A DNA stretch of 64,000 bases from Octopus bimaculoides (taxonomy: Eukaryota): positions 2,008,966-2,072,965 of the forward strand of contig NC_068990.1 of NCBI RefSeq assembly GCF_001194135.2, in the 5' to 3' direction. Under the pieces are notes generated by a model. That model worked only from the letters and a program-made list of their open reading frames with translations. It did no database searches and had not been told where the DNA came from. The position numbers were made by a program, and so were the translations under genes. Shown here piece by piece: positions 2,225 through 60,282 of the stretch; positions within the stretch are counted from its first letter, which is position 1, and each line of letters starts with the position of its first letter.

Positions 2225-3117
2225 AGTTAATATCGATTTCAAATTTTGGCCTACGGCCAACAATTTGCGGTGAGAAGGTAAGTCGATTACATCCACCCTG
2301 ATACGTAACTGGTACTTATTTTATCGACCACTGAAAGATAAAAAGCAGTCGACCTTGGCGGGATTTGACTTCAGAATGTGAAGACGGACGGAATGTCATC
2401 AAGCATCTTGCCTGGCATGCTAACGACTCTCTTAGCTTGCTGCTTTATGTAGATTTAATATTGGTTTCATATTTTGGCACAAGGCCAGCATTTTCGGGTG
2501 TGGGGTTTAATCGATTACATTGACCCCAGTGCTAAACTGGCACTTATTTTATCGACCCCAGAAGGATGAAAGGCAGAGCCTATCTCTGCGAAATTCGAAC
2601 AAAACATAAAGATGGACGAAAATCCATAAAGCATTTTGCCTTGTGCTAACGATTCTGCCTGCTCGCGGCCTTAAACACGGTCTAATATTCTTTTCTACTC
2701 TAGAAACAAGGTCCGAAATTTTTGGGGAGGAGGCCAGTCGATTAGATCACCCCAGGTCGCAACTGGTACTTAATTTATCGACCCCGAAAAGATGAAAGGC
2801 AAAGTCGACCTCGGCAGAATTTGAACTCAGAACGTAAAGACAGACGAAATAGCGCTAAGTATTTCGCTTGGCGTTCTAACATTTCTTATTTCTTTATTGC
2901 CCACAAGGGGCTAAACATAGAGGGGACAAACAAGGACAGCCAAAGGGATTAAGTCGATTACATCAACCCCAGTGCGTAACTGGTACTTAATTTATCGACC
3001 CCGAAAAGATGACAGGCAAAGTCGCCCTCGGCGGAATTTGAACTCTGAACGTAACGACAGACGAAATACCGCTTAGCATTTCGCCCGGCGTGCTAACGTT
3101 TCTGCCAGCTCGCCGCC
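2225..3117 (-). mobile_element. Head-to-tail train of four tRNA-derived SINEs (family A)
   Basis: Reverse complement repeats GGCGGCGAGCTGGCAGAA..GTTAGC (box A-like), GAGTTCAAATTCC (box B) and GAGGTCGACTTTGCCTTTCATCCTTTCGGGGTCGATAAA..AGTACCAG. The youngest copy is 2881-3117. Confidence 0.85.
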
Positions 3118-9180: not shown

Positions 9181-9904
9181 GTTATAAATACCTACCGTTT
9201 TGGAGACTGAACTCAAGAAAAGTATCTCTAGTGAAGTGGACTACTGTCTCAGAAAGTTTTGTATGTTAAGTGCATGTTAGCTAGTTGTTAGCCACCTAGT
9301 TAGTTAGTTAAGTGCATGTTAGCTCGTGCATGTTGTACGTTAGCTAGAGCTGGCACTGTCAGGAGACCCAGTAGCTCTTATAAACGCAAGAGAAGTGAAG
9401 GACAAAATATTTCTTAGTGTTATATTAGTACGTTTAAAGTGTCTTGTAGAATCATAACGTTGGCTTTATGATCTGCATAGAAGCATATGGTTCTAACTGA
9501 AATAGTTAGAGGCTATTGTGTTGTTTCTACCTATTCAGATAATAATAAATACACTTTCTGTTTAGTAATGATAAGTAAAGAACATACATATATACATTCG
9601 TATAAACACAGACAAACAGACACACAACACGCACACACATACACACATATGCATATACATGCATACACACATACACACACATTTTATTGAAATAGTTTAT
9701 CATGGTACTTGAGTTTAGGTTGACACTAATCAATTCAAATTTCGCATTTGGTTGCGTGAGTAGATATGTATTTATGAATACATGCTTAAGCATCAGATAA
9801 ATGTATGCAGTTGACAATGAAATAAATGGATTTAATAGGAATCATGTCTGGTTTTCATTTAAAATTGTATTAGATCAAGAAATATATATATATANNNNNN
9901 NNNN

Positions 9905-9946
<42 letters not shown>

Positions 9947-10220
9947 AGTTTTGCTTCGTATTTTGTCTGTCATTTCAAGACAGTCTAAGATAGTGAAGTC
10001 CATAAGTTAATGACGCATGTAGAAACCTATGAGCTGTGAGAGTGCACCTTAGAGTTGCGATTCTTTGAGGTATAGGTCAGAGTGATATTGTTAGTATGGA
10101 GTGTGGTGCGTGAAACAATGTAGTGACCAGGAAGAGATGATGAATAGGTTAATATGATTATCTTACGCAGAGGAAATACATGGTTTGTTAGTTCACAAGC
10201 ACATAAACTATTTTAGTAAG

Positions 10221-13200
10221 TGTTATGGCGATAATAATAATAATGCAAAACCTCTCCCACGTGACGAGTGTTATGCGCCAGTCGTTACAAATACTGTAAA
10301 GTAGGAAGTCGAGTCTTCGAAAAGTTGGCGAAGTCGGTTATAGATAGTTCGTATCTTTACTTGTCTAACTAGCAATACTGGTATATTGGAGTGGACGTTA
10401 TAACAGTCCGACGTCGGATTACAACAGTGGCGACAAAGAATTAAGAAACTCACGAGGATTAAACAAACTCACAAGGGGTTTACGAATGTCATAAAAGTAA
10501 TGTGACATTTCATGACAAAATGAAAACGGCAAAATATGAGTTAAAAAAATTCAGTAAATTTGTTCATCACAGAGTGGATGGAACCCTTCAAATTATAGAA
10601 TACGCCCACAAGTGTTTGTATGGGAATATAGTTGGTTCAGTCGAAGGTTCGAATGCACCTGAAGGATTGAAACGAAGAATAAAATATTTATTCCCAGATG
10701 TTTTCTCGGATGAAGTGGGCTGCTGCACGAAAACGAAGGAAAAATTGTAAAACAAAGTGCAACACTTGTATTTAGGGCAAAACGTGATGTACCGTTCGCG
10801 GCGCTAGAACAGGTAAATAAACAACTTAAAAGACTTGAAAGACTAGGAATAATCGAGAAGACGGACCACTCATATTTGCGGTCTACTTAAAAAAAAAAAA
10901 TAATAATTTATTACGAATTTGTGCAGATTTTTCAACGGGTTTAAATGATTACTTAAGTTCACATAACTACCGATTACCGAGTCCTGAGGAAGTATTTGCA
11001 AAATTGAATGGAAGGAAATTCTTCTCAAAATTAGACCTCTCAGAGGCACACTTACAAATCCAAGTAGAAGAAGAATGCTAACATTTATTAGCCATTAACA
11101 CGCACCGTGACTTATTCAAATTTAAGCAGCTTCCCTTCGATGTAAAAGTGGCTCCTTCCATATTTCAACAGGTAATGGCTACAATGCTGGTGGACTGTGA
11201 TTTTGCTATCGCCTATTTAGACGATATCGTAGTAAAAAGCGAATCAGACGAACAACATGTAGAACACGTAAAAAGGGTATTCAAAAAGGTAAGAGAATAC
11301 TGCCTTAAGCTAAGCGAAGAAAAATGCGAGTTCTTTCTGTGAAAAATGAAATACTTGGGTCACATAATAAGCAAAAATAGACAGAAACCGGATCCATCCA
11401 GAGCAACTGCGATAATATGCCCACGCCGAATAATGTGACTATGATACAAGTATTTTGGGGATTAGTAAATTACTACCAAATTTATATTCCCAGTATACAA
11501 AATGTAAGGGCCACGCTAAATGATTTGTTAAAGAAAAATGCAAAATACTGCTGGACTGATAAGTGCCAGAGGGCATTTGACGAATAAAAAAACATTTGAA
11601 CATCGAACTTATCGATAACGCATTTTGATCCGAAGCTGGATATTATAGTCACTACAGATGCGAGTGATTATGGTGTAGGAGCAGTGCTTCTGCGCAAATA
11701 TGACAATGGGAGTATAAAGGCAACAGCCCACGTGTCACGATCGTTATTGACAGCAGAAAGGGACTACAGCCAAATAGAAAAGGAAGCGTTAGCAATTATA
11801 TTTGGTGTAAAAAAAAATTTAATACATTTATTCATGGAAGATATTTCTGTCTACAAACGAATCATCGTCCACTACTGTCGACATACGGTCCTAAAAAAGG
11901 AATACCAACACACACAATTAATAGACTACAGCGATGGGGCACCATATTATTGAATTATGATTTCAAAACAGAATATTTACCGTCAGAGAAACTAAAACAT
12001 TCGAAGATACAGTATGCGGTATGCGAATTACTGGTGACCCTAGAAGGCATAAAACGAAATGCGGAAAAGGACAAATTCATAACTGAAATGAAAAGAATAC
12101 TGTGGACAGGAAAAGTAAATAGGAACAGGATTGATGCGAAACGAAACGAAGCCGTGAACCTACACTCAATCGGTGATAGTGTACTGATCTATGCATAAAG
12201 AGTAGTAATACCTGAAACCCTGCAAAAGAAAACGGTGGGGGAATTCCATGTTGGACATTCTGGTATTTGGGGGATAAAAGCTTTAGTGCATAGCAACGTG
12301 TGCTGGCCAAAAATAGATAGAGAAATTTAAAGTTTAGTGAACGGCTGCAGAGGATGTGCTCTAGCAGCAAAATTACCGACGATAAAAAAGTGAATTTTGA
12401 CCAAAAGCAGGTGTCCCGTTGTCAAGACTACACATAGATTTCACTGGTCTCTTAAACGGTTCATACTACTTAGTGATAGTAGATGGTTTCTCTAAATGGA
12501 CAGAAATCTGTAAGTGTAAAAGGCCAACATCCTCAATTACGACAAACTTTTTACATGAGTTGTTTGCAACTGGAACACAATTTGTATCTTTTGAGTTTAA
12601 AAAGTTTTGTAAAACATTCCCTGTAGAACATGTAACTACGGCGTCATGCCATCCCAGATATAACGGATAAGCAGAACGCTTTGTCGATACGTTCAAGAGA
12701 ACCCTGAGAAAGTCCGTGACGGATGAAGTAGCTCTGCAACAGTTCCTAAAAGTATCCCGAGTGACACCAAATCCAAACACCAGCAGATATGTCACCAGCG
12801 GGGCTGATTTTTGCGAGGAAAATAAAATGCTTTTTCGACAAATTGCTACTTGGTATGAAAAAATAAATTGTAATGGATAAGAGAGCAAGATATTTCAAAA
12901 TTGGTGAAAATGTATTTGCTAGGGCACATAAGAACGGAAAAGAAAGTTGAGAAGACGGCGTGATTACCAAACGCATAGGAAAAATGCTATACTTGGTAAA
13001 AGGAAGAAAATGGGTATACAAGAGACACATAAATCAACTAAAAAAAAAAACATTCGTTGAGAGCGAACCAATGGAATGATTATGTGATACTTTTCAAGTA
13101 CCAACGGTACTACAAATAATTGAAGCCAGACACACGAGCGAAAGAAAAAGAAAATGTTCGGAGTTCCTGGAAGTAGATACCAAATTTGTAACTGTATGAA

Positions 13201-19513: not shown

Positions 19514-20170
19514 GGCGGTGAGCTGGCACAAACGTTAGTACGCCGGGTGAAATGCTCGGCGGTATTTCGTCTGTTTTTGCGTTCTGAGTTCAAAATTCCA
19601 CCGAGGTCGACTTTGCCTTTCATCCTCTCGTGGTCGATAAATGATGTGCCACTTGCGTACTGGGATCGATCTAATCGACTGGCTCCCTCCCCAAAAATTT
19701 CGAGCCTTGTGCCTAAAGTAGAAAAGAAAAGAAAGCGGCGAGCTGGCAGAACCGTTCGGACGCTGGACGAAATGCTTAGCGGTATTTCGCCCGTCGCTAC
19801 ATTCTGAGTTCGAATTCTGCCGAGGTCGACTTTGCCTTTCATCCCTTCGTGGTCGATGAAATAAATACCAGTTACGCACTGAGGTCAATGAAATCGACTA
19901 TCCCCCCTCCCCCAAATTTTAGGCCTTGTGCCTAATGAAGAAAAGAATATTAAAGGCGGCGAGCTGGCAGAATCGTTAGCTGCCCGGATGGAATGCTTAG
20001 CGGTATTTCGTCTGTCTTTATGTTCTGAGTTCAAATTCCGCCGAAGTCGACTTTACCTTTCATCCTTTCGCGGTCGATAAATTATATACCAGTTGCGTAC
20101 TGGGGTCGATCTAATCGACTGGTCCCTTCCCCCAAAATTTCAGGCTTTGTACCCAGAGTTGAAAAGATAT
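19514..20170 (+). mobile_element. Three head-to-tail SINE family A copies
   Basis: Starts at 19514, 19735 and 19955 (period about 220). Each has box A/B, the GTCGACTTTGCCTTTCATCC core and a CCCCAAAATTTC..CTTGTGCC..GAAAAGAA tail. Confidence 0.9.
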
Positions 20171-21419
20171 ATAACCAAGAGAGTCAAGAAGACACAGACA
20201 TTTGATTGCTGTAAACAGTTTATCTCAGAAGATTGTCCAGAAAGTTAATGCGAAACACTCATCAGTAATCTACGAGAGTATTTGATTTGTTTTAATGTCT
20301 TACGTTCTGAGTTCAAATCCGCTTATAAACAAATTTTCTATTCATCCAACTAGGGTTGGCAACATAAAATACCAGTCAAGTAACTTGGGCCTTTAAATTT
20401 GTAGCCGTGTTAGAAATTCATGCTATTACCAACCCGATATCACTACACATATTTACTTACACTAACAATCGACATTACTGTTACAACATTACAATGTCAC
20501 CGCTTCAACATCATTTTCATATCAATAACTACAAATCCACGTCGTTGACACAAAAGCATTCTCATGACAACGTTATGTATGCAGCAGCATAGCAATTCGT
20601 TCTTTGTCACCCTATTTTGCTGTTTTTTGTTACATGGGGCATTTGCGCGCGCTGCCGATTTCTTATAGCATTTTAAGACATTTCAGTAAAAAAAATAAAT
20701 AAATAAATAAATAGACGATATTCGCTAATGTCTGTTTTGCCCAAACGTCTCGCTAATATCCTTGCCGATTCTCATTAGCGTCCATCGACACATCTCCAAC
20801 CAATTATGTACGTATGCACTTTGGTAGGTGGTTATGCATGAATGCATGCATATATTTATTTATATATGTATGTATGCATGTATGCGTCTGCATGTATGCT
20901 TGTGTATGTATGTGTATACTCACATATAAATACTCTGGAAGTCATTTCGTGTCCGAATACAGTGACTTGTAAATTTCTTGGAAAACAGCAAAGGGAGAGT
21001 ATCTTCAGTAGCAGAGTCAATGGTTACTTCCTGATTTATGCAATCGTTAGGTGTGGATTGCTATCCTAAGAAAGTGAACGATCATCAGGTTTTATGTCAG
21101 ATTTTCTTCCTTCACAAAATTTATTACAACACATAGGAGTCTTCACAACAAGTAGTCTTGCTGCATGCTCGTACACTTATCACGAATGTTTCTAAGGCCC
21201 ACGCACATTTGCTAGATAGTCGGTGAGCATATATAAGGTTCATCGCCCGTTTTGGCCTACTGAGTTTAAAGCAACCGTCATCACTAGGCAAGCATAGAGT
21301 AACCAATTTAGTCACCGATGACCAGACAATCCAATATTTGTACAGAAATGCATATCATCTGTAGTACCGGTGAATGAAATGAAATGCAGACTTATACTAA
21401 TATCCATCTATCTATATAT

Positions 21420-34959: not shown

Positions 34960-35735
34960 AACCTCACTTTCAAGGTTCAGGTATACTTCTGGATGGAGCA
35001 TGTTATTCAGTTGGATTCTTTTCTCTGTGAAGCATTCTATAACTCTTACTTTTGCTAAGTCAAGGTCTGAAATTTTCCAGTATCCTACAGGTGATGTTGT
35101 AATGTGCAATATTCTCTTTCAATATCGATATATGTCTCGCAAAAGTTGTGACATTACGGCTCTCCTGCATATATTAACCGTGGATTTGGGGTTGATGAAC
35201 CTGGACATAAAGAAGCTTCCGTCGCACTCAGGTATTCCCATACACATCTTCTTCGACACAATCTCCGCCTCATGCACGAAGGGACCCGTATTGCCTCAAC
35301 CGTTTAAGGGACATGTGCTGTTACTTCTGCACGAGGAGTCTACTTATTTGCTATATGTGAATTTAATATTTTCTTTATACCTGGTGCACAGCTGAAAGAA
35401 ATCCTTAAAATATGGCTATTAAGTATGCCTATTCTATACCTATGTTTTTGAGGAAAATGACATTTTATAAACATAAGGGAGAGCCCATCTACACAATTTG
35501 TAGTATTAATGGAAAGCGGAATTGTGAATCATATGAACAAATGGGAGTACTTCATTTTTGAGAGGTTAGAGCCAGGGCCTCACTATTGTGTGGGATGCGG
35601 CGTGGAAGACCCCTTAATTGAAGATGACTTGGACATTCTTCTACTAACATTCTTTACCAAACTAGGTTTTTGAAAACTATGGTTAGATGGTAGAAAGGAT
35701 GCCGATATGTTAGCATCTAATTCGGTTTCCTGACA
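34960..35735 (-). mobile_element. Penelope-like element: RT-EN linker and GIY-YIG endonuclease, decayed
   Basis: Minus, across frameshifts: SNHS..LVKNVSRRMSKSSS / FTIPLS...KCHFPQKHRY...ILRISFSCAPGIKKILNSH / CRSNSTCPLNG*GNTGPFVHEAEI..MGIPE..FMSRFINPKST / LKENIAHYNITCRIL..SKSKSY..REK. This follows the PLE pattern SNHP..KRIS.LSS, WFNPPYS, HFP, K+SYSC, CNC...CPL.G.C, GIY-YIG. Confidence 0.8.
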
Positions 35736-35739
35736 CGTG

Positions 35740-35772
<33 letters not shown>

Positions 35773-35780
35773 TAGATATA

Positions 35781-36393
35781 TTCATGACACGCATTCAGTC
35801 GTGACTGCTTTTGATCTTCCGTAAGCAAGCGAAAAACAAATTTTGCTGCAACTCTTTTCATTCGTAATTCCTCTCTCAGCATTCGTTTGGCGAAGCTCAA
35901 GGACACACCGGTCATATCAACAATTTCGGCAATTGTCCGGTGACGGTCCTCCGAGATCAGTTCATGAATTTTCGTGACTTTTGCATTCGTTCGGGAGTTC
36001 GACGGTCGCCCTGAACAACGTTGGCCTTCAAGCGAAAAGTGGCCATTTCTAAAGCGCAAAAACCACTCATAAACTTGTGCTTTACTCATAGTAGCATCCT
36101 TGTAAGCTGTTTGAAGCATGAGAACTGTTTGGGTCAATAATTTCCCCAGCAGAAAGCAAAATTGCATGGAAGTATGTTGTTCCTTCGTTCATGTATCACA
36201 AAAATCGATCGATGAACAGGGCAGAAGCACTGCATAACAAAACGCAGCACACGGCAGTCTGACACCACATGACAACGCCAATCGGCAGACTGATGCCTGA
36301 GAATCGCAACAAGTGGCTTCTAGCGGCAGAACTCTGAAATACAACGGGCTTGTTCCACAGAGAACGTACCTGATTACTTTTAGGTACCTCCTA
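35781..36393 (-). mobile_element. Mariner (Tc1/mariner) 5' fragment: TIR plus HTH half of the transposase
   Basis: EQHTSMQFCFLLGK...AYKDATMSKAQVYEWFLRFRNG..SLE....SGRP...IHELISEDRHRTI.EI...LREELRMKRVAAKFVFRLLTEDQKQSRLNACHE. TIR-like TA-GGAGGTACCTAAAAGTAATCAGG at about 36369-36393. DD34D domain absent. Confidence 0.92.
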
Positions 36394-36993: not shown

Positions 36994-37412
36994 GCGAGCT
37001 GGCAAGATGGGTAGCATACCGGGGGGAAACGCTTGCGGCACTTCGTTCATTTTTACATTACGAGTTAAAATTCCGCCGAGTCGACATTGCCTTTCATCAC
37101 TTCAGGGTCTAAAAAATAAGTACCATTTGAGGATTGGAGTCAATGTAGCCGACATACTTCTCCGAAATTGATGGCATTGTACCATAATTTGAAACTAATT
37201 AAGGTGGTGAGCTGGCAGAGTCGTTGGCATACCGGTAGAAATGCATAGCAACATTTCGTCAGTCTTTATGTTCTAAGTTCAATTTCCACCGAGGTCGACT
37301 TTGCCTCTCATCCTTTCGGGGCCGATAAAACAAGTCCTGGTTGACCATTGAGGTCGATGTAAGCGACTACTCCTTCCCCCAAATTTCGGACCTTGTGCCT
37401 ATAATAGAAAGG

Positions 37413-37413
<1 letters not shown>
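36994..37413 (+). mobile_element. Two tandem SINE family A copies
   Basis: Starts at about 36994 and 37203; the second ends in a (TTA)n tract. Confidence 0.8.
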
Positions 37414-37457
<44 letters not shown>

Positions 37458-42185: not shown

Positions 42186-42280
42186 CCTCATCATCATCAT
42201 TATAATTTTGGGGGAGGTGGATTGTCGATTACATCAGTTCCAGTACTCACCTGGTACTTATTTTATCGACCCCATGAAAG

Positions 42281-42800
42281 GAACCCTAAACAAAACAGAC
42301 CGAGAGATTTATACTGGCAGTGCAGGACCTAGTACTGGCTACGAACTGGAGGGTCAACCTGAGGAATGAACAAGGTTTTCCACTGTGCCGCATTTGCAAT
42401 AGAGTGGATGAAACCATTGAGCATATCATGAACGAATGCCCTAGACTTGCCCCAGTCCACTACAAGTTGTGTCGACACGACCATGTAGCGAAAGTGCTAT
42501 ATTGGAAGCTCTGCGAAAAGTGGGGGCTAGAGAGAGGCAAGACGTGGTATGAGCACAAACCGCAGACAGTGGTGGAGTCGGAAGGCATCAAGAAGAATAT
42601 AAAGGGAATTGGAATAGAGTACCCAGTAGAACTGTTACAAAAGGTTTGCCTCCTTGGCACGGCCAGAATAATCAGGGAAGTATTAGATAGCTGAAAAACA
42701 AAACAAAACGAATAGCATGACACCATAGGCTGCGGGTAGCAAGCCCGCTATGCACGCTAGATTCCAGGAGTTCCCCAACAAAATATGTGATAAAGAGAAA
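42281..42800 (+). mobile_element. R4/Dong-like element (copy E): 3' end with the endonuclease core deleted
   Basis: AVQDLVLATN...CRICNRVDETIEHIMNECPRLA..Y...RHDHVAKVLYWKLC..W...WYEHKPQTVVESE joined directly to GIKKNI..LLQKVCLLGTARIIREVL*. Decayed (TAA)n tail. Confidence 0.88.
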
Positions 42801-43109
42801 ATAATAACAATAATCATAATTATAATAATGGTTTCCAATTTTTTGCCACAAGGGGAGTAATTTTGGAGGAGGGGATGAGTCAATTACATCAACCCAGTGT
42901 TCAATTGGTACTTATTTTATTTACCCCGAAAGGATGAAAGGTAAAGTCAACCTCAGTGGAATTTGAACTCTGAACGTAGCGACGGGCGAAATACTGCTAA
43001 ACATTTCGTCCAGCGCGCTAACGTTTTTGCCAGCTCACCGTCTTAATAATAATGGGCTTCGTATATTTTACCTCAGTGTCACTTTGATGGCATGCAATGC
43101 TCTCTCACT

Positions 43110-43236: not shown

Positions 43237-44961
43237 CGTGAATCAGAGTCGGTGCGTGTGTTAATATTGGCAGAAAGAGCTGTCTCCAGATAGAATATCA
43301 TTTGTTTCAATACAAAAAAACTTCATATCATCGGTCGTGCAAGCAGACTCATACAGATGGTACGTAAAAACATTTGTCTCAAACTACGAGACACGTATAA
43401 ATCTAATATGGCGCCTCAGGTGCAGGATTATTTGTGCCATTAAAATTGAAGCACACCGACCTAAAAGGGTTCGCATCCGCTTTTCATCAGTAATGACATT
43501 TACAGCGGTTTACTCCATTTAATAGATGTTAGATTTAGTCGCAGCTGTTGCAATGCACAATGACGTTAGATTTAAATAAATCCATCAAGTGAATTCTTAG
43601 TAATCCTTTGATCTGCTCAAAAGCTTAATATCTTTAAACTGAGAATCACAGGTTAGAGGCCATGAAAATATAAGGATTATGTTGCCGGTATAAGAACGGA
43701 CTTTCCATTTAATTCAAGTATCTTAGTAAGTGCGTTGTTTAGCCCCAGGTCAGTATTGGATGAGTAAACCTATGAACGATGGTCTTTCAGGTATGCCCAT
43801 TCCATCTTACGGATATGTAGGACGACATTACCCAATGTGCCCTTTATTGTTATAGTGTATGTTCGACTAATGATTATATTAATGAACGAAAAATATTGCA
43901 TTAATTTTAAAACGAAATTGAAAAGGTAAGCTGTAAATGCAGTTGACCACGATGTAAGTGAATAAGCCGGAATGCCGAACAAGCACCAAGCAGTGGACGA
44001 AGAATAAATCTATAAAATGAGTCAACGAATAAAATATTTCACCTGATGGAGTCAGTAATGTGTCATGCGATTGGATGAACAGGCGTAAGCTGAAAGACAA
44101 ACAAGTCGGAGTACGAAAACGTCACATGATTGAATCGTGTCACGTGATTGGATGGATGAAAATAGACAATCTTTTCTTTCTACTAAAGGCACAGGCTACT
44201 AGTCGATTACATCGACCCGTGTTTCACTTGTACTTAATAATCGACCTCGAAAAGATGAAAGGCAAAGTTGACCTTGGTGGAATTTGAACTCAGAATATAA
44301 AGACTCACGAAATGCCGCTAAGGATTTTGTCTAGCGTGTTAACGGTTCTGCCAGGTCACTCTTTATTTCAAACTTTTGGCCATTAAGGCCTTTCTGCCAG
44401 GTCACTCTTAATAGACAATGTTTGTGGTGAGACAACTGAGGTTGTCTGTTTTATATCTATTTAAGACAGTAGATATAATTTAAGGAAATTTGGTTCCTAT
44501 TGTCCGCAAAGGTAGGGACCACGTCTTGTTGGTTCTGTGAGCGATCCCTAAGCGATCAGTTTGTTTTTTAATCTCCATGCTGAAGAGGAGGTGACTAAAC
44601 CTATTTTCGTCACCGTTACTACCACCATCACTGAGAATGGCGCTCCTAAATATCACTCCACATACAAGAGATAATCCCTAAATTCCGTTAAATATGTTCA
44701 CTACTGCATCAAAATAGGAAGGGCATATTGGACATTATCATCTGAAATATATCAAAATGTGGCATGGTCCTTAACCAGGGCTTAGCTAGAACCAAACAGG
44801 AACAAAAGCAACAATGGCAGAAGCAATGATTTGATGCTGGAAACCCTTATATAGTCAGACCATATGCTAGAAATTACAGCCCAGTCTATTTCATACTATG
44901 TGCTGCAGAGATAAGAGATAGTAGAGGACCAGGTGCAACAAGTGTGAATGACTTTGATTTA

Positions 44962-46976: not shown

Positions 46977-47229
46977 ACTGACGGTGCAGAGTAGCACCTA
47001 CATTGCTAGAAATAAGATGTACAAAGCCTCTTAGTCGCGAAGAAGCACACATCTGTGTACCGAGAGAAGAACTAACCGCCCCACAGCGAGCAAGATCACC
47101 AGAGTGGAATTCTGGTTTCGCTTGAAATTAAAGTCCTTCACTAAATGGTTTCGCGAAATCCCGACTGTCAGTATATAGTATTTACCATTTGAACCAATAG
47201 TTTATTCAGCAAAATGGTAATGTGAAAAT

Positions 47230-47650: not shown

Positions 47651-47872
47651 TGAAATATCGTAAGATAGATACGAACATACATGATGGCTTTCTACTCATG
47701 ACCAAGGAAAACAGTCAGGTCGGCTTCACTTGGGTTTGTAACCGTGTTTTTTGATGCTCACTGCATCGCTCTCCAACTCAACCAGGCATCTAAAACCGCC
47801 TCGTCGGTGATTGTTAGATGACTACTATATATACATATAATCTGAATTTTATAGTGTTAATTATCCATCAGG

Positions 47873-47962
47873 GCTGGTCTTACCAATCGGTTTCGCGTGA
47901 AATTATATAATGGAGTGTTAGGTAACAAACCTGTTATATAATATATGCTCGTTAGAGACAGC
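47873..47962 (-). ncRNA. Type I hammerhead ribozyme, left-arm copy (core G5->A)
   Basis: Minus: GCTGTCT-CTAACGA-GCAT...ACGC-GAAA-CC(GATT)GG-TA-AGACCAGC. Stem I 7 bp with one bulge, perfect stem III with GUA site, long stem II. Core CUAACGA is mutated. Confidence 0.75.
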
Positions 47963-47991
47963 CGACATAGAAAGGGACCCCTTCTATGTCA

Positions 47992-48081
47992 GCTACCTCT
48001 GACGAGCGTATATTATATAATTGATTTGTTGCCTAACACTCCATTATATAATTTCACGCGAAACCGATTGATAAGACCAGC
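47992..48081 (+). ncRNA. Type I hammerhead ribozyme, right-arm copy (core intact, stems I and III mutated)
   Basis: CTGACGA 47999-48005, GCGT/ACGC 48006-48009/48056-48059, GAAA 48060-48063, ACC-GATT-GAT-A (site 48073), AGACCAGC 48074-48081. Confidence 0.75.
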
Positions 48082-48594
48082 TGTGATGGATAATTAACAC
48101 TATAAAATTCAAACAATATACCCACTCTACTAACAGTTATACGAGCGCATCTCCCTGACTTATGATCTCCTTGAGGACTGAAGCAGTATACATATAGTTT
48201 CAATGATGCAAAAAAAAAATCTCTATTTTCATTGCATGTGTCTAAGTCTGTATGTGCCTCGAGTTATGATAAAAAATAAAATGTACGATGCATTGTGAAG
48301 GAATGGGTAACCGTGTGGTTCCACAATGGAATTCTTAACACTGCAGCCATGGTTGCTCCCGTGTTTACTGTGTTTCTGTATGGGATTAATAATTGTATTT
48401 GGAAAAGTTTGTTTATTTTACCGTTTGTTATTTCCTATTCTTGGTATCATTAGTTTCTGGATAATATCGATTTCTGCAATGAAGTTATTGTTGTCGCTGT
48501 TGCCTGTCAGTGTTGAAAAGATCGTTAGATGAATACGTTATTTTTTTTTTACTTCTTCTGTCTCCGGACACGGCTAGCCTTAATGATTATATAA

Positions 48595-48642
<48 letters not shown>

Positions 48643-48696
48643 NNNNNNNNNNNNNNNNNNNNNNNNNNNNNNNNNNNNNNNNNNNNNNNNNNNNNN

Positions 48697-48756
<60 letters not shown>

Positions 48757-49165
48757 CACATAGATATGCATATATATATAACACATAGATATGCATACAC
48801 ACACACGCACACAAACGTGCACAAGAAATGCACACCCATATAATGTGTAAATAGGAGTGTTTGGATTGTACAAACACGCTTTATTGCATAATTCTACAAC
48901 TTTTTCATTTTCGCTTTTCTGGCAGAAAATTACTGAAATATATCAATGTAATAGATACATGAAATTTATTACATCGCATTAGTTCAGTAATATTGGTAAA
49001 TGAAGTCACAGCGGAAATTCATAGATATCCTGATATACAATAAGTTTTCTTTGTTACACTGTGCCTGGTCGCCAATACATGCGGCCGAGCTTTATAAAGT
49101 GTACTACAAGTTTCATACTCAAATGGAATTTAGATACATATATATATATATATATATACATATAT

Positions 49166-60048: not shown

Positions 60049-60282
60049 GGCGGCGAGCTGGCAGAAACGTTAGCACACCGGGCGAAATGCTTAGCCGTAT
60101 TTCGTCTGCCGCTACGTTCTGAGTTCAAATTCCGCCGAGGTCGACTTTGCCTTTCATCCTTTCGGGGTCGATTAAATAAGTACCAGTTACGCATTGGGGT
60201 CGATATAATCGACTTAATCCGTGTTTGTCTGTCCTTGTTTGTCCCCTCTGTGTGTAGCCCCTTGCGGGTAGTAAAGAAATAA
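60049..60282 (+). mobile_element. SINE family A, best-preserved full-length copy
   Basis: GGCGGCGAGCTGGCAGAAACGTTAGC...GAGTTCAAATTCCGCCGAGGTCGACTTTGCCTTTCATCCTTTCGGGGTCGAT...GTAAAGAAATAA. Confidence 0.92.

What the first reader, a model, noticed from the sequence alone, without database searches (positions are those of the whole stretch)
47843..48111. Palindrome made of two head-to-head hammerhead ribozymes with complementary lesions and a long stem II
Seen: a 269-bp palindrome (about 90% arm identity, 1-nt centre, no indels). Each arm encodes a full type I hammerhead pointing outward. The plus copy has an intact CUGACGA core, GCGU/ACGC and GAAA, but a G->A in stem III and two stem I changes. 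The minus copy has perfect stem III (ACC/GGU, GAUU loop, GUA site) and a 7-bp stem I, but CUAACGA and one stem II mismatch. The consensus of the arms is a textbook-complete hammerhead. Stem II is extended to about 54 nt through ATTATATAA/TTATATAAT and TGTT/AACA helices, unlike the minimal hammerheads of Penelope-like elements. Established: PLEs and retrozymes carry hammerheads, and PLE insertions often have inverted terminal repeats. Inference: this is an inverted-dimer insertion of a hammerhead-bearing retroelement family. A transcript from either strand would carry one ribozyme plus its full antisense, i.e. a self-sequestering 134-bp dsRNA that is also a candidate ADAR or siRNA substrate in a lineage known for extensive A-to-I editing.
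Basis: partly seen in the sequence, partly recalled or inferred. Interest (0 to 1): 0.9.

Follow-up and report, generated by a model that had tools for sequence, protein, structure and literature searches.

The report
Decayed head-to-head hammerhead ribozyme repeat
A 285-bp DNA palindrome in a repeat-rich animal genome is made of two mutated, back-to-back copies of the end of a mobile element that once carried a self-cutting hammerhead RNA; it is a real but dead example of a known kind of element, not a new mechanism.

Summary
Arms 47835-47976 and 47978-48119 form a 142-nt inverted repeat (126/142 identical, no indels, 1-nt centre). Each arm read outward carries a type I hammerhead. A full hammerhead in the either-arm consensus is not chance (about 2e-7 per nt in 25 Mb of random sequence, so about 6e-5 for these arms; the extended stem I adds a further factor of about 5e-3). 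That consensus folds into the three-way junction by plain MFE. Both extant copies are damaged: the plus copy has stem III and stem I mismatches, and the minus copy has G5>A in the core plus stem II and stem I mismatches. Differences are as dense inside the ribozyme as outside, so nothing has constrained it since the duplication. Rfam's hammerhead models do not match at any threshold. No third copy was found in the window or in any searchable collection, so family conservation and covariation could not be tested. There is no tandem array, no RT/GIY-YIG gene and no clear target-site duplication. The best reading is one insertion of a hammerhead-bearing Penelope-like/retrozyme-class retroelement as a 5'-truncated inverted dimer, a documented Penelope-like architecture, now decayed. 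The dsRNA/ADAR/siRNA idea is untested inference. New member of a known kind; modest interest.

The parts
47835..48119 (.). Whole palindrome (two 142-nt arms around centre base 47977)
   Evidence: the repeat finder I1, 89% complementary, 1 nt between the arms; 126/142 identical, 0 indels; no N within it, nearest N run 48643-48696
47978..48119 (+). Right arm = 'plus' copy of the element's 3' end (arm position p = window 47977+p)
   Evidence: model R1 scores 132.1 bits at 47982-48092
47835..47976 (-). Left arm = 'minus' copy (arm position p = window 47977-p)
   Evidence: model R1 scores 132.4 bits at 47972-47862
47983..48090 (+). Plus-copy type I hammerhead (outer helix, stem I, core, stem II, stem III). 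The core is intact; C.A mismatch in stem III (A48071) and two stem I mismatches (47995-47996)
   Evidence: sequence; non-pairs 87/94, 19/99 and 18/100 in arm coordinates, hammerhead-structure energy -16.5 against MFE -23.3 kcal/mol
47999..48005 (+). Plus-copy core strand CUGACGA (C3-A9), intact
   Evidence: read directly
48006..48059 (+). Plus-copy stem II, 54 nt: 4-bp base GCGU/ACGC, internal loop, 10-bp AUUAUAUAAU/AUUAUAUAAU helix, GA/UC, UGUU/AACA, loop GCCU
   Evidence: RNAfold of the arm; pair counts for helices 2 and 3
48060..48073 (+). Plus-copy GAAA, stem III (ACC / GAUU / GAU) and the A17 cleavage-site nucleotide; predicted scission between 48073 and 48074
   Evidence: read directly; arm positions 83-96
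47864..47971 (-). Minus-copy type I hammerhead. Stem III and the GUA site are perfect; core G5>A, A.C in the stem II base, C.A in the stem II extension, C.C at the distal end of stem I
   Evidence: non-pairs 44/66, 31/80 and 13/106; hammerhead-structure energy -19.4 against MFE -24.7 kcal/mol
47949..47955 (-). Minus-copy core strand CUAACGA; lesion G5>A at 47953
   Evidence: read directly; difference at arm position 24
47881..47894 (-). Minus-copy GAAA, stem III ACC/GAUU/GGU and A17; predicted scission between 47881 and 47880
   Evidence: read directly
48091..48119 (+). Right-arm 3' tail after the ribozyme (...AUAAUUAACACUAUAAAAUUCA, then 8 poorly matching bases). Its outer end is the presumed 3' terminus of the element
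   Evidence: arm identity is perfect over positions 107-134 and drops after 134
47835..47863 (-). Left-arm 3' tail (mirror of the above), abutting a TA-rich flank (47812-47840 CTACTATATATACATATAAT)

Best explanation
The locus is a dead relic of one insertion of a hammerhead-bearing retroelement of the Penelope-like (PLE) / non-LTR retrozyme class. It holds two copies of the element's last ~134-142 nt. Both copies are truncated at the same 5' point (the palindrome centre), both end at the same 3' terminus, and they are joined head to head.

Inferred mechanism. Reverse transcription started at the element RNA's 3' end at a nicked, TA-rich target and copied about 140 nt through the ribozyme. It then turned back, either by template switch onto the nascent cDNA or by a second priming on the other target strand. 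That produced the inverted 5'-truncated dimer that PLE-type integration often leaves behind. In the parent element the type I hammerhead would have cut multimeric or read-through transcripts to unit length after GUA. It has a 4-bp helix II base extended by a long imperfect hairpin, a 3-bp helix III with a GAUU loop, and a long bulged helix I.

Since insertion the two arms have drifted apart by 11% with no constraint, and each now carries lesions expected to cripple cleavage. Any transcript spanning the palindrome would fold into a ~134-bp hairpin rather than a ribozyme.

Shown: the palindrome, the hammerhead anatomy and its statistical reality, the lesions, the lack of constraint, and the energetics. 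Inferred: the retroelement class, the single-event origin, the ribozyme's former role, and the inactivity of the extant copies.
For: Palindrome geometry, with identical inner and outer ends for both arms.

A complete hammerhead in the either-arm consensus. Chance rate: 5 hits in 25 Mb under the lenient rule and 0 under the strict rule. The extended stem I has a chance factor of 5.5e-3.

The unconstrained MFE of the consensus (-31.7 kcal/mol) is the three-way hammerhead junction. 91.9% of cells pair, against 26-45% when the 3' partners are slid. The base that fits the hammerhead at the stem II difference (arm position 31, GCGU vs GCAU) is also the one expected to be ancestral from CpG decay.

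Neutral decay: 12/108 differences inside the ribozyme against 4/34 outside, 1 of 14 invariant core positions hit, 13/16 transitions.

Arms have 37-39% GC. The left flank is TA-microsatellite-like.

Literature. PLE insertions are highly 5'-truncated and often have an inverted 5'-truncated copy adjacent; the hammerhead lies in the pLTR near the 3' end; they favour microsatellite/(TA)n targets (PMC8557442). Canonical metazoan type I hammerheads have a 4-bp helix II and a short helix III with a small loop (PMC4209133). They sit in low-GC non-LTR retrozymes (PMC7229834). Those retrozymes appear to be non-autonomous, pLTR-derived relatives of PLEs (bioRxiv 10.64898/2026.07.22.740005).

The hairpin of -195 to -198 kcal/mol against -16 to -28 for the ribozyme fold supports sequestration in read-through RNA.
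Against: No second locus of this family was found: blastn, nhmmer and a structure-aware model find only the two arms in 64 kb. DNA scans of metagenome, prokaryote-genome and viral collections find nothing related. So 'repeated family' is assumed, not shown.

No RT or GIY-YIG remnant in the window. No convincing target-site duplication or 30-40 bp tail. No direct tandem copies.

Rfam hammerhead models do not match at any threshold.

The ribozyme is not the minimal type usual for metazoan PLEs (PMC4209133). A 54-nt stem II is atypical, since stems II are usually short (PMC3088659, PMC4209133).

Covariation between the two copies is not significant: one compensatory pair, with 282/500 shuffles doing as well.
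Confidence: 0.55

Rival explanations
1. Post-insertion DNA palindrome. A single hammerhead-bearing repeat, or part of one, was later duplicated in inverted orientation by a DNA-level event such as fold-back repair of a break or a replication template switch. Integration had nothing to do with it.
For: A 1-nt centre and perfectly symmetric arms without indels are what fold-back priming at a break gives. No target-site duplication flanks the pair. There is no RT/endonuclease remnant nearby.
Against: Both arms stop matching at the same outer point right after a perfectly shared 28-nt tail. That fits a defined element terminus better than an arbitrary duplication breakpoint, although without other copies the element's end is unknown. 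Inverted 5'-truncated partners are a known direct product of PLE integration (PMC8557442).
Confidence: 0.2
2. Palindromic MITE or foldback DNA transposon whose arms happen to derive from, or contain, a hammerhead sequence. It would move as DNA, and the ribozyme would be a passenger.
For: It is a 270-285 bp, AT-rich, nearly full-length inverted repeat with no coding capacity. It sits next to TA-rich sequence. A mariner-type transposase remnant lies in the same window.
Against: There is no recognisable terminal motif or target-site duplication such as TA, TTAA or 8 bp. There is no second copy in 64 kb, whereas the window's SINE-like repeat has at least 18. MITE arms are normally only terminally inverted or kept similar across many copies. 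Hammerheads in animals are otherwise tied to retroelements (PMC4209133, PMC7229834).
Confidence: 0.1
3. The hammerhead is a chance resemblance inside an ordinary AT-rich palindrome, read into the sequence by picking the convenient base from either arm.
For: Neither arm alone passes a standard descriptor. Rfam finds no hammerhead. Consensus-conforming hammerheads are expected by chance in very large databases (PMC3088659). The number of windows the first stage read is unknown.
Against: Even with the either-arm leniency the rate is 2e-7 per nt, so about 6e-5 for these arms and about 0.03 for the whole window. The extra 10 bp of stem I adds a factor of about 5e-3. The plus arm has all invariant core nucleotides intact. 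The consensus adopts the fold as its unconstrained MFE.
Confidence: 0.05
4. Assembly artefact: a chimeric or fold-back read produced a false palindrome.
For: The assembly is gapped: 13 N runs in the window, with the nearest 524 bp away. PLE-type inverted structures are known to trouble short-read assemblies (PMC8557442).
Against: Artefactual fold-backs give near-identical arms. Here the arms differ at 16 sites, 13 of them transitions including CpG-decay-type changes, and have no indels. That is an evolutionary signature, not a technical one. There is no N inside or adjacent to the palindrome.
Confidence: 0.03

Closest known systems
Penelope-like element (PLE) insertions with pLTR hammerheads and an adjacent inverted 5'-truncated copy (PMC8557442, PMC4209133, PMC11167929)
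   Same: A hammerhead near the element terminus; strong 5' truncation; an inverted partner copy abutting it; no poly(A); a TA-rich/microsatellite target; no clear target-site duplication.
   Different: There is no RT/GIY-YIG ORF or longer pLTR here. The ribozyme has a proper helix III and a 4-bp helix II base, unlike the minimal hammerheads of metazoan PLEs (no helix III, 7-8 bp helix II). No sequence link to any PLE could be tested.
Metazoan non-LTR retrozymes carrying canonical type I hammerheads (PMC7229834; bioRxiv 10.64898/2026.07.22.740005)
   Same: A type I hammerhead with a short helix III capped by a tetraloop; low GC; small and non-coding; proposed to be PLE-derived and PLE-mobilised.
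   Different: Retrozymes are direct tandem repeats of 170-400 bp expressed as circular RNAs. Here there is no direct repeat, only an inverted pair of ~140-nt 3' fragments. Helix II carries a ~46-nt extension in place of the loop 2 that normally contacts helix I.
Schistosoma Sm-alpha and amphibian satellite 2 type I hammerheads (as summarised in PMC4209133 and PMC7229834)
   Same: The same core, the same type I topology, and a repeat-associated context in an animal genome.
   Different: Those have a 4-bp helix II closed by a short conserved loop and a 1-2 bp helix III with a palindromic loop that allows dimeric action. Here the GAUU loop is not palindromic and helix II is long. Rfam models built on such sequences do not match.
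Hairpin-RNA (inverted-repeat) loci that feed endo-siRNA or ADAR pathways
   Same: A read-through transcript would form a ~134-bp, ~89% paired hairpin of about -195 kcal/mol.
   Different: There is no evidence of transcription, small RNAs or editing. This is a resemblance in predicted structure only.

Membership tests
Hammerhead ribozyme, type I | Invariant core: C3 U4 G5 A6 N7 G8 A9, G12 A13 A14, A15.1-U16.1, H17, and the G10.1-C11.1 pair | tested here: met
   All are present in the plus copy (47999-48005, 48006/48059, 48060-48063, 48072-48073) and in the either-arm consensus. The minus copy fails at G5 (A at 47953).
Hammerhead ribozyme, type I | Three helices around the core, with helix I open and helices II and III closed by loops | tested here: met
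   The consensus passes the descriptor and folds this way as its unconstrained MFE. 91.9% of cells pair, against 26-45% in slid controls. Each extant arm has 3 non-pairs.
Hammerhead ribozyme, type I | Match to a curated covariance model (the Rfam hammerhead families) at or above gathering score | tested here: not met
   No hammerhead family matched at gathering score or at E<=10 on 551 nt or on each arm alone. The likely causes are the ~46-nt helix II insertion plus the lesions, but that was not tested.
Hammerhead ribozyme, type I | Conservation of the core and covariation in the stems across independent copies | tested here: inconclusive
   Only two copies exist to compare. There is one compensatory pair (A-U / G-C at arm positions 14/105), which is not significant (282/500 shuffles). 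No further copies could be retrieved.
Hammerhead ribozyme, type I | Site-specific self-cleavage after the H17 nucleotide | not testable with these tools
   This needs in vitro transcription of the consensus and of each arm.
Hammerhead ribozyme, type I | Loop 1 / loop 2 tertiary contact of canonical metazoan motifs | not tested
   Loop 2 is replaced by an internal loop (AU/UUC) plus a long hairpin, and helix I has a bulged C after 4 bp. Whether these make contact cannot be judged from sequence.
Penelope-like element | ORF with a telomerase-like RT and a GIY-YIG endonuclease | tested here: not met
   There is no GIY-YIG or PLE-type RT signature in six-frame translations of the window; the only YxDD belongs to an LTR-element RT at about 11.2 kb. 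Pfam finds nothing on the neighbouring ORFs. An ORF is not expected in a strongly 5'-truncated copy, so this only shows the locus is not an autonomous element.
Penelope-like element | Insertion architecture: 5'-truncated copies, with an inverted 5'-truncated copy adjacent, forming inverted repeats | tested here: met
   Two outward-facing 3' fragments are joined at one point, an architecture described in PMC8557442.
Penelope-like element | 30-40 bp 'tail' extension, target-site duplication, and a microsatellite target | tested here: inconclusive
   The left flank is TA-rich. No duplication beyond a low-complexity ATATA could be identified, and no tail.
Penelope-like element | Sequence homology of the arm to the pLTR of an autonomous PLE in the same genome | not testable with these tools
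   The source genome and Repbase/Dfam are not searchable here.
Non-LTR retrozyme | Direct tandem repeats (170-400 bp) that each carry a type I hammerhead | tested here: not met
   TRF finds only microsatellites in 45.5-50.5 kb. The model R1 finds only the two inverted copies.
Non-LTR retrozyme | Low GC content and a canonical type I hammerhead with a short helix III plus a small loop | tested here: met
   Arms have 0.37-0.39 GC. Helix III is ACC/GGU with a GAUU loop. Compare PMC7229834.
Non-LTR retrozyme | Expression as linear and circular RNAs of unit length | not testable with these tools
   No transcriptome data are available here.
MITE / foldback DNA transposon | Terminal inverted repeats flanked by a fixed-length target-site duplication, present in many copies | tested here: inconclusive
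   The inverted repeat is trivially present. No target-site duplication was found, and there is no second copy in 64 kb. The genome-wide copy number is unknown.

The most novel reading that the evidence does not exclude
The arms sample an undescribed, possibly still active family of type I hammerheads in which loop 2 is replaced by a ~46-nt imperfect hairpin. The family would be mobilised by PLE machinery. Its frequent head-to-head insertions would act as built-in hairpin-RNA loci that mask the ribozyme and feed siRNA or ADAR pathways against the family itself.
Probability: 0.1. Interest if true: 0.55.

Novelty: new member of a known kind. Interest (0 to 1): 0.3.

Why it matters
If the family exists elsewhere in this genome, the locus would add a hammerhead with an unusually long helix II to the catalogue of animal retroelement ribozymes. 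It would also be a clean example of the inverted-dimer product of PLE-type integration acting on a tiny non-autonomous element, which supports the recent view that animal retrozymes are PLE dependants. It is also a practical warning: curated covariance models miss real but decayed, insertion-bearing hammerheads. As it stands, this single decayed locus has no evident present function and changes no open question.

Tried and rejected
1. Rfam on the whole window at gathering score, and on 551 nt and each arm alone at E<=10. No hammerhead matched. The only hits were generic long-hairpin matches (MIR6217, mir-599 and others), rejected because they simply reflect the palindrome.

2. A search for family copies.
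- blastn, nhmmer and a purpose-built covariance model on the window found only the two arms.
- Exact or degenerate DNA scans of metagenome contigs, prokaryote genomes and viral contigs found nothing related. The one viral hit (L001 8533-8609) lies in a phage coding region, has no supporting stems and no Rfam match, and about one such hit is expected by chance, so it was rejected.
- Searching the open frame across the ribozyme as a pseudo-protein profile found no candidates.
- A search of sequence strings in the paper library found nothing.

3. Reaching the source genome through TE proteins.
- The exact mariner ORF is not on record.
- The LINE zf-RVT ORF has no homologues.
- The mariner N-terminus has two distant metagenomic relatives, with no trace of the repeat and no megablast similarity to the window.
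- The host organism therefore remains unidentified.

4. The 'CGCGAAACC' / 'AGCGAAACC' fragments at 47098-47165(-) were considered as an older copy. They were rejected as not significant (E=2.3, no hit, and the core reads CUGACAG).

5. Target-site duplication, tail, and flank-to-flank repeats: only low-complexity matches.

6. Tandem retrozyme array: absent.

7. PLE ORF remnants: absent.
Full report
**1. What is in the sequence**

The repeat finder reports one long inverted repeat: arms 47835-47976 and 47978-48119, 142 nt, 89% complementary, with a single base (47977) between them. Aligning the right arm with the reverse complement of the left arm gives 126/142 identities. There are 16 differences, 13 of them transitions, and no indels.

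There are no N runs in or next to the palindrome; the nearest is 48643-48696. Eleven per cent divergence dominated by transitions, with two CpG-decay-type changes and no indels, is an evolutionary signature. A fold-back sequencing artefact would not look like this.

**2. The hammerhead anatomy**

Read outward from the centre, each arm has the order expected of a type I hammerhead. Arm position p equals window 47977+p on the plus strand and 47977-p on the minus strand.

| Part | Arm positions | Sequence |
|---|---|---|
| Outer helix | 6-10 / 109-113 | UCUAU / AUGGA |
| Helix I | 13-21 / 97-106 | 4 bp next to the core, a bulged C101, then 5 bp |
| Core strand | 22-28 | CUGACGA |
| Helix II base | 29-32 / 79-82 | GCGU / ACGC |
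| Second core strand | 83-86 | GAAA |
| Helix III | 86-95 | ACC / GAUU / GGU |
| Cleavage nucleotide | 96 | A17 |

Helix II is extended by an internal loop, a 10-bp helix made of the self-complementary decamer AUUAUAUAAU, then GA/UC and UGUU/AACA, with a GCCU loop. It spans 54 nt in all.

- **Plus copy.** It keeps every invariant core nucleotide. It has C.A in helix III (A at 48071) and two mismatches in helix I (47995-47996).
- **Minus copy.** It has a perfect helix III and GUA site. It carries G5>A in the core (47953), an A.C in the helix II base (47946), a C.A in the extension and a C.C at the distal end of helix I.

**3. Is it more than chance?**

I wrote a descriptor requiring the following:
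- CUGANGA;
- at least 4 bp of helix II adjacent to the core;
- GAAA;
- a 3-bp helix III including A15.1-U16.1, with a 3-8 nt loop;
- H17;
- at least 4 bp of helix I.

It finds nothing intact in the window, and neither arm alone passes. The either-arm consensus does pass.

In 25 Mb of first-order Markov sequence with the window's composition there were 0 strict hits. That is about 2e-7 per nt, so about 6e-5 for the 284 positions of the two arms and about 0.03 for the whole window on both strands. The additional helix I pairs (5 bp after the bulge plus the 5-bp outer helix) occur by chance with probability about 5.5e-3, which lowers these figures further.

Several other results support the motif:
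- The consensus adopts the three-way junction as its unconstrained minimum-free-energy structure, at -31.7 kcal/mol.
- On the two-arm alignment 91.9% of cells pair in the proposed structure, against 26-45% when the partners are slid by 1-3 columns. That control is partly circular, because the structure was derived from these sequences.
- At the helix II difference (GCGU vs GCAU), CpG decay independently points to the hammerhead-compatible G as ancestral.

I conclude with roughly 0.9 confidence that the common ancestor of the arms encoded a complete hammerhead.

**4. What the curated models say**

Rfam's hammerhead families give no match at gathering score on the window. They also give none at E<=10 on 551 nt or on each arm alone with the laxest filters. 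The matches that do appear are microRNA-precursor and sRNA models that simply fit a long hairpin.

The ~46-nt insertion in helix II plus three lesions per copy are plausible reasons, but I could not submit a repaired or shortened sequence to test that. This membership feature is recorded as not met.

**5. State of the two copies**

Differences between the arms are as frequent inside the ribozyme (12/108) as outside it (4/34). One of the 14 invariant core positions is hit, and 9 of the 74 paired positions differ. Among the changes in helices there is one compensatory pair (A-U vs G-C at arm positions 14/105) and one A-U to G.U change. Six changes break pairs. The covariation measures are matched by 282 of 500 shuffles.

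There is thus no sign of purifying selection since the duplication. Each arm's own MFE structure is not the hammerhead: -23.3 against -16.5 kcal/mol for the plus arm, and -24.7 against -19.4 for the minus arm. From general knowledge of the ribozyme, G5 substitutions and loss of helix III severely reduce cleavage. I infer, but cannot show, that both copies are inactive.

**6. Context**

The window is AT-rich (35% GC) and gapped, and full of animal-type repeats:
- a SINE-like repeat with at least 18 copies;
- LTR-retrotransposon pol remnants near 10-13 kb;
- a mariner-type HTH_48 ORF;
- LINE zf-RVT fragments.

Around the palindrome I found none of the following:
- a direct tandem repeat of long period;
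- an RT or GIY-YIG signature;
- a convincing target-site duplication or tail.

The left flank is TA-microsatellite-like. blastn, nhmmer and a covariance model built from the arms with the hammerhead structure find only the two arms in 64 kb. The 'CGCGAAACC' fragments at 47.1 kb are not significant.

**7. Attempts to find the family elsewhere**

- Exact and degenerate DNA patterns found nothing related in the metagenome, prokaryote-genome or viral collections. One viral hit was a chance match inside a phage gene.
- The open frame across the ribozyme, used as a pseudo-protein profile, found no candidates.
- TE proteins of the window did not lead to the source genome.
- The ribozyme's sequence is not printed in any searchable paper.

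The decisive test, conservation and covariation across genomic copies, therefore could not be run.

**8. Interpretation**

Each arm is a 3'-terminal fragment that reads outward. The arms share the same outer end, with a perfectly shared 28-nt tail up to ...CACUAUAAAAUUCA, and the same inner truncation point. This is what one insertion event that produces an inverted pair of 5'-truncated copies would leave.

That architecture is documented for Penelope-like elements (PLEs). They show a high degree of 5' truncation, often have an inverted 5'-truncated copy immediately adjacent, carry hammerheads within pLTRs near the 3' ends, and favour microsatellite/(TA)n targets (PMC8557442; see also PMC11167929).

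The ribozyme itself is not the minimal PLE type, which lacks helix III and has a 7-8 bp helix II (PMC4209133). It resembles the canonical metazoan type I of low-GC non-LTR retrozymes (PMC7229834). A 2026 preprint argues that those retrozymes are non-autonomous, pLTR-derived dependants of PLEs (10.64898/2026.07.22.740005).

Putting these together, the best explanation is a decayed inverted-dimer insertion of a small hammerhead-bearing element of the PLE/retrozyme class (confidence about 0.55). The rivals are:

| Rival | Confidence |
|---|---|
| Later DNA-level inverted duplication of a solo copy | 0.2 |
| Palindromic MITE carrying the motif | 0.1 |
| Chance resemblance | 0.05 |
| Assembly artefact | 0.03 |

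**9. The dsRNA idea**

Folded as RNA, the whole palindrome gives a hairpin of -195.4 kcal/mol on the plus strand and -198.2 on the minus strand. The ribozyme fold is worth only -16 to -28. In a read-through transcript the antisense arm is made first, and the ribozyme's 5' strand emerges right next to it.

So sequestration of the ribozyme in a ~134-bp duplex is the expected outcome. Whether the locus is transcribed, edited or diced is entirely untested.

**10. Verdict**

The object is a dead relic of a known kind of element with one unusual feature, the long helix II. Novelty: new member of a known kind. Interest: about 0.3.

Noticed in passing
window 2262-3103, 19530-20172, 37052-37419, 42204-43026, 44201-44349, 60063-60282 and others: A ~200-bp SINE-like repeat occurs at least 18 times in the window (75-89% identity to the query copy). 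It gives recurrent pseudo-peptides such as 'RPRKDERQSRPRRNLNSE'. ARAGORN finds no tRNA-like head.
   Followed up: partly
window ~9900-13000 (+): Remnants of an LTR-retrotransposon pol: an RT with YLDD at about 11214, RNase H-like and integrase-like stretches, broken by stops. It was not assembled or analysed further.
   Followed up: no
window 35583-36167 (-): A mariner/Mos1-type transposase N-terminus (Pfam HTH_48, E=3.6e-8), truncated. Its nearest database relatives are 68% and 51% identical and sit on metagenomic contigs (L002, L003).
   Followed up: partly
window 42320-42694 (+), with related fragments in 38-42 kb: A LINE 3' ORF with a zf-RVT match (E=1.5e-4, below Pfam's cut-off) and several paralogous CxxC...H...C fragments nearby. 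The protein collection holds no homologue.
   Followed up: partly
window 47098-47165 (-): The sequence 'CUGACAG..CGCGAAACCAUUUAGU..AGCGAAACCAGA' lies 700 bp upstream and looks like hammerhead 3' halves. It is not significant (nhmmer E=2.3, no covariance-model hit) and its core is wrong.
   Followed up: yes
window 48012-48021, 48043-48052, 47902-47911, 48586-48595: The self-complementary decamer ATTATATAAT supplies both strands of the helix II extension, so it is at once a direct and an inverted repeat. An extra copy lies about 470 bp to the right of the palindrome. The antisense of helix II folds similarly (hits 3-4).
   Followed up: partly
window 48598-48780: An assembly gap (54 N, 48643-48696) sits between a (TC)n run and an (AT)n run. 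The window has 13 N runs, and at this site the gap coincides with microsatellites.
   Followed up: no
L003 5590-5856 and 9157-9351: A JGI metagenome contig (sample 3300042609) carries SMG1-like exons and a mariner fragment, so it is eukaryotic DNA inside a metagenome. It is unrelated to the finding.
   Followed up: no
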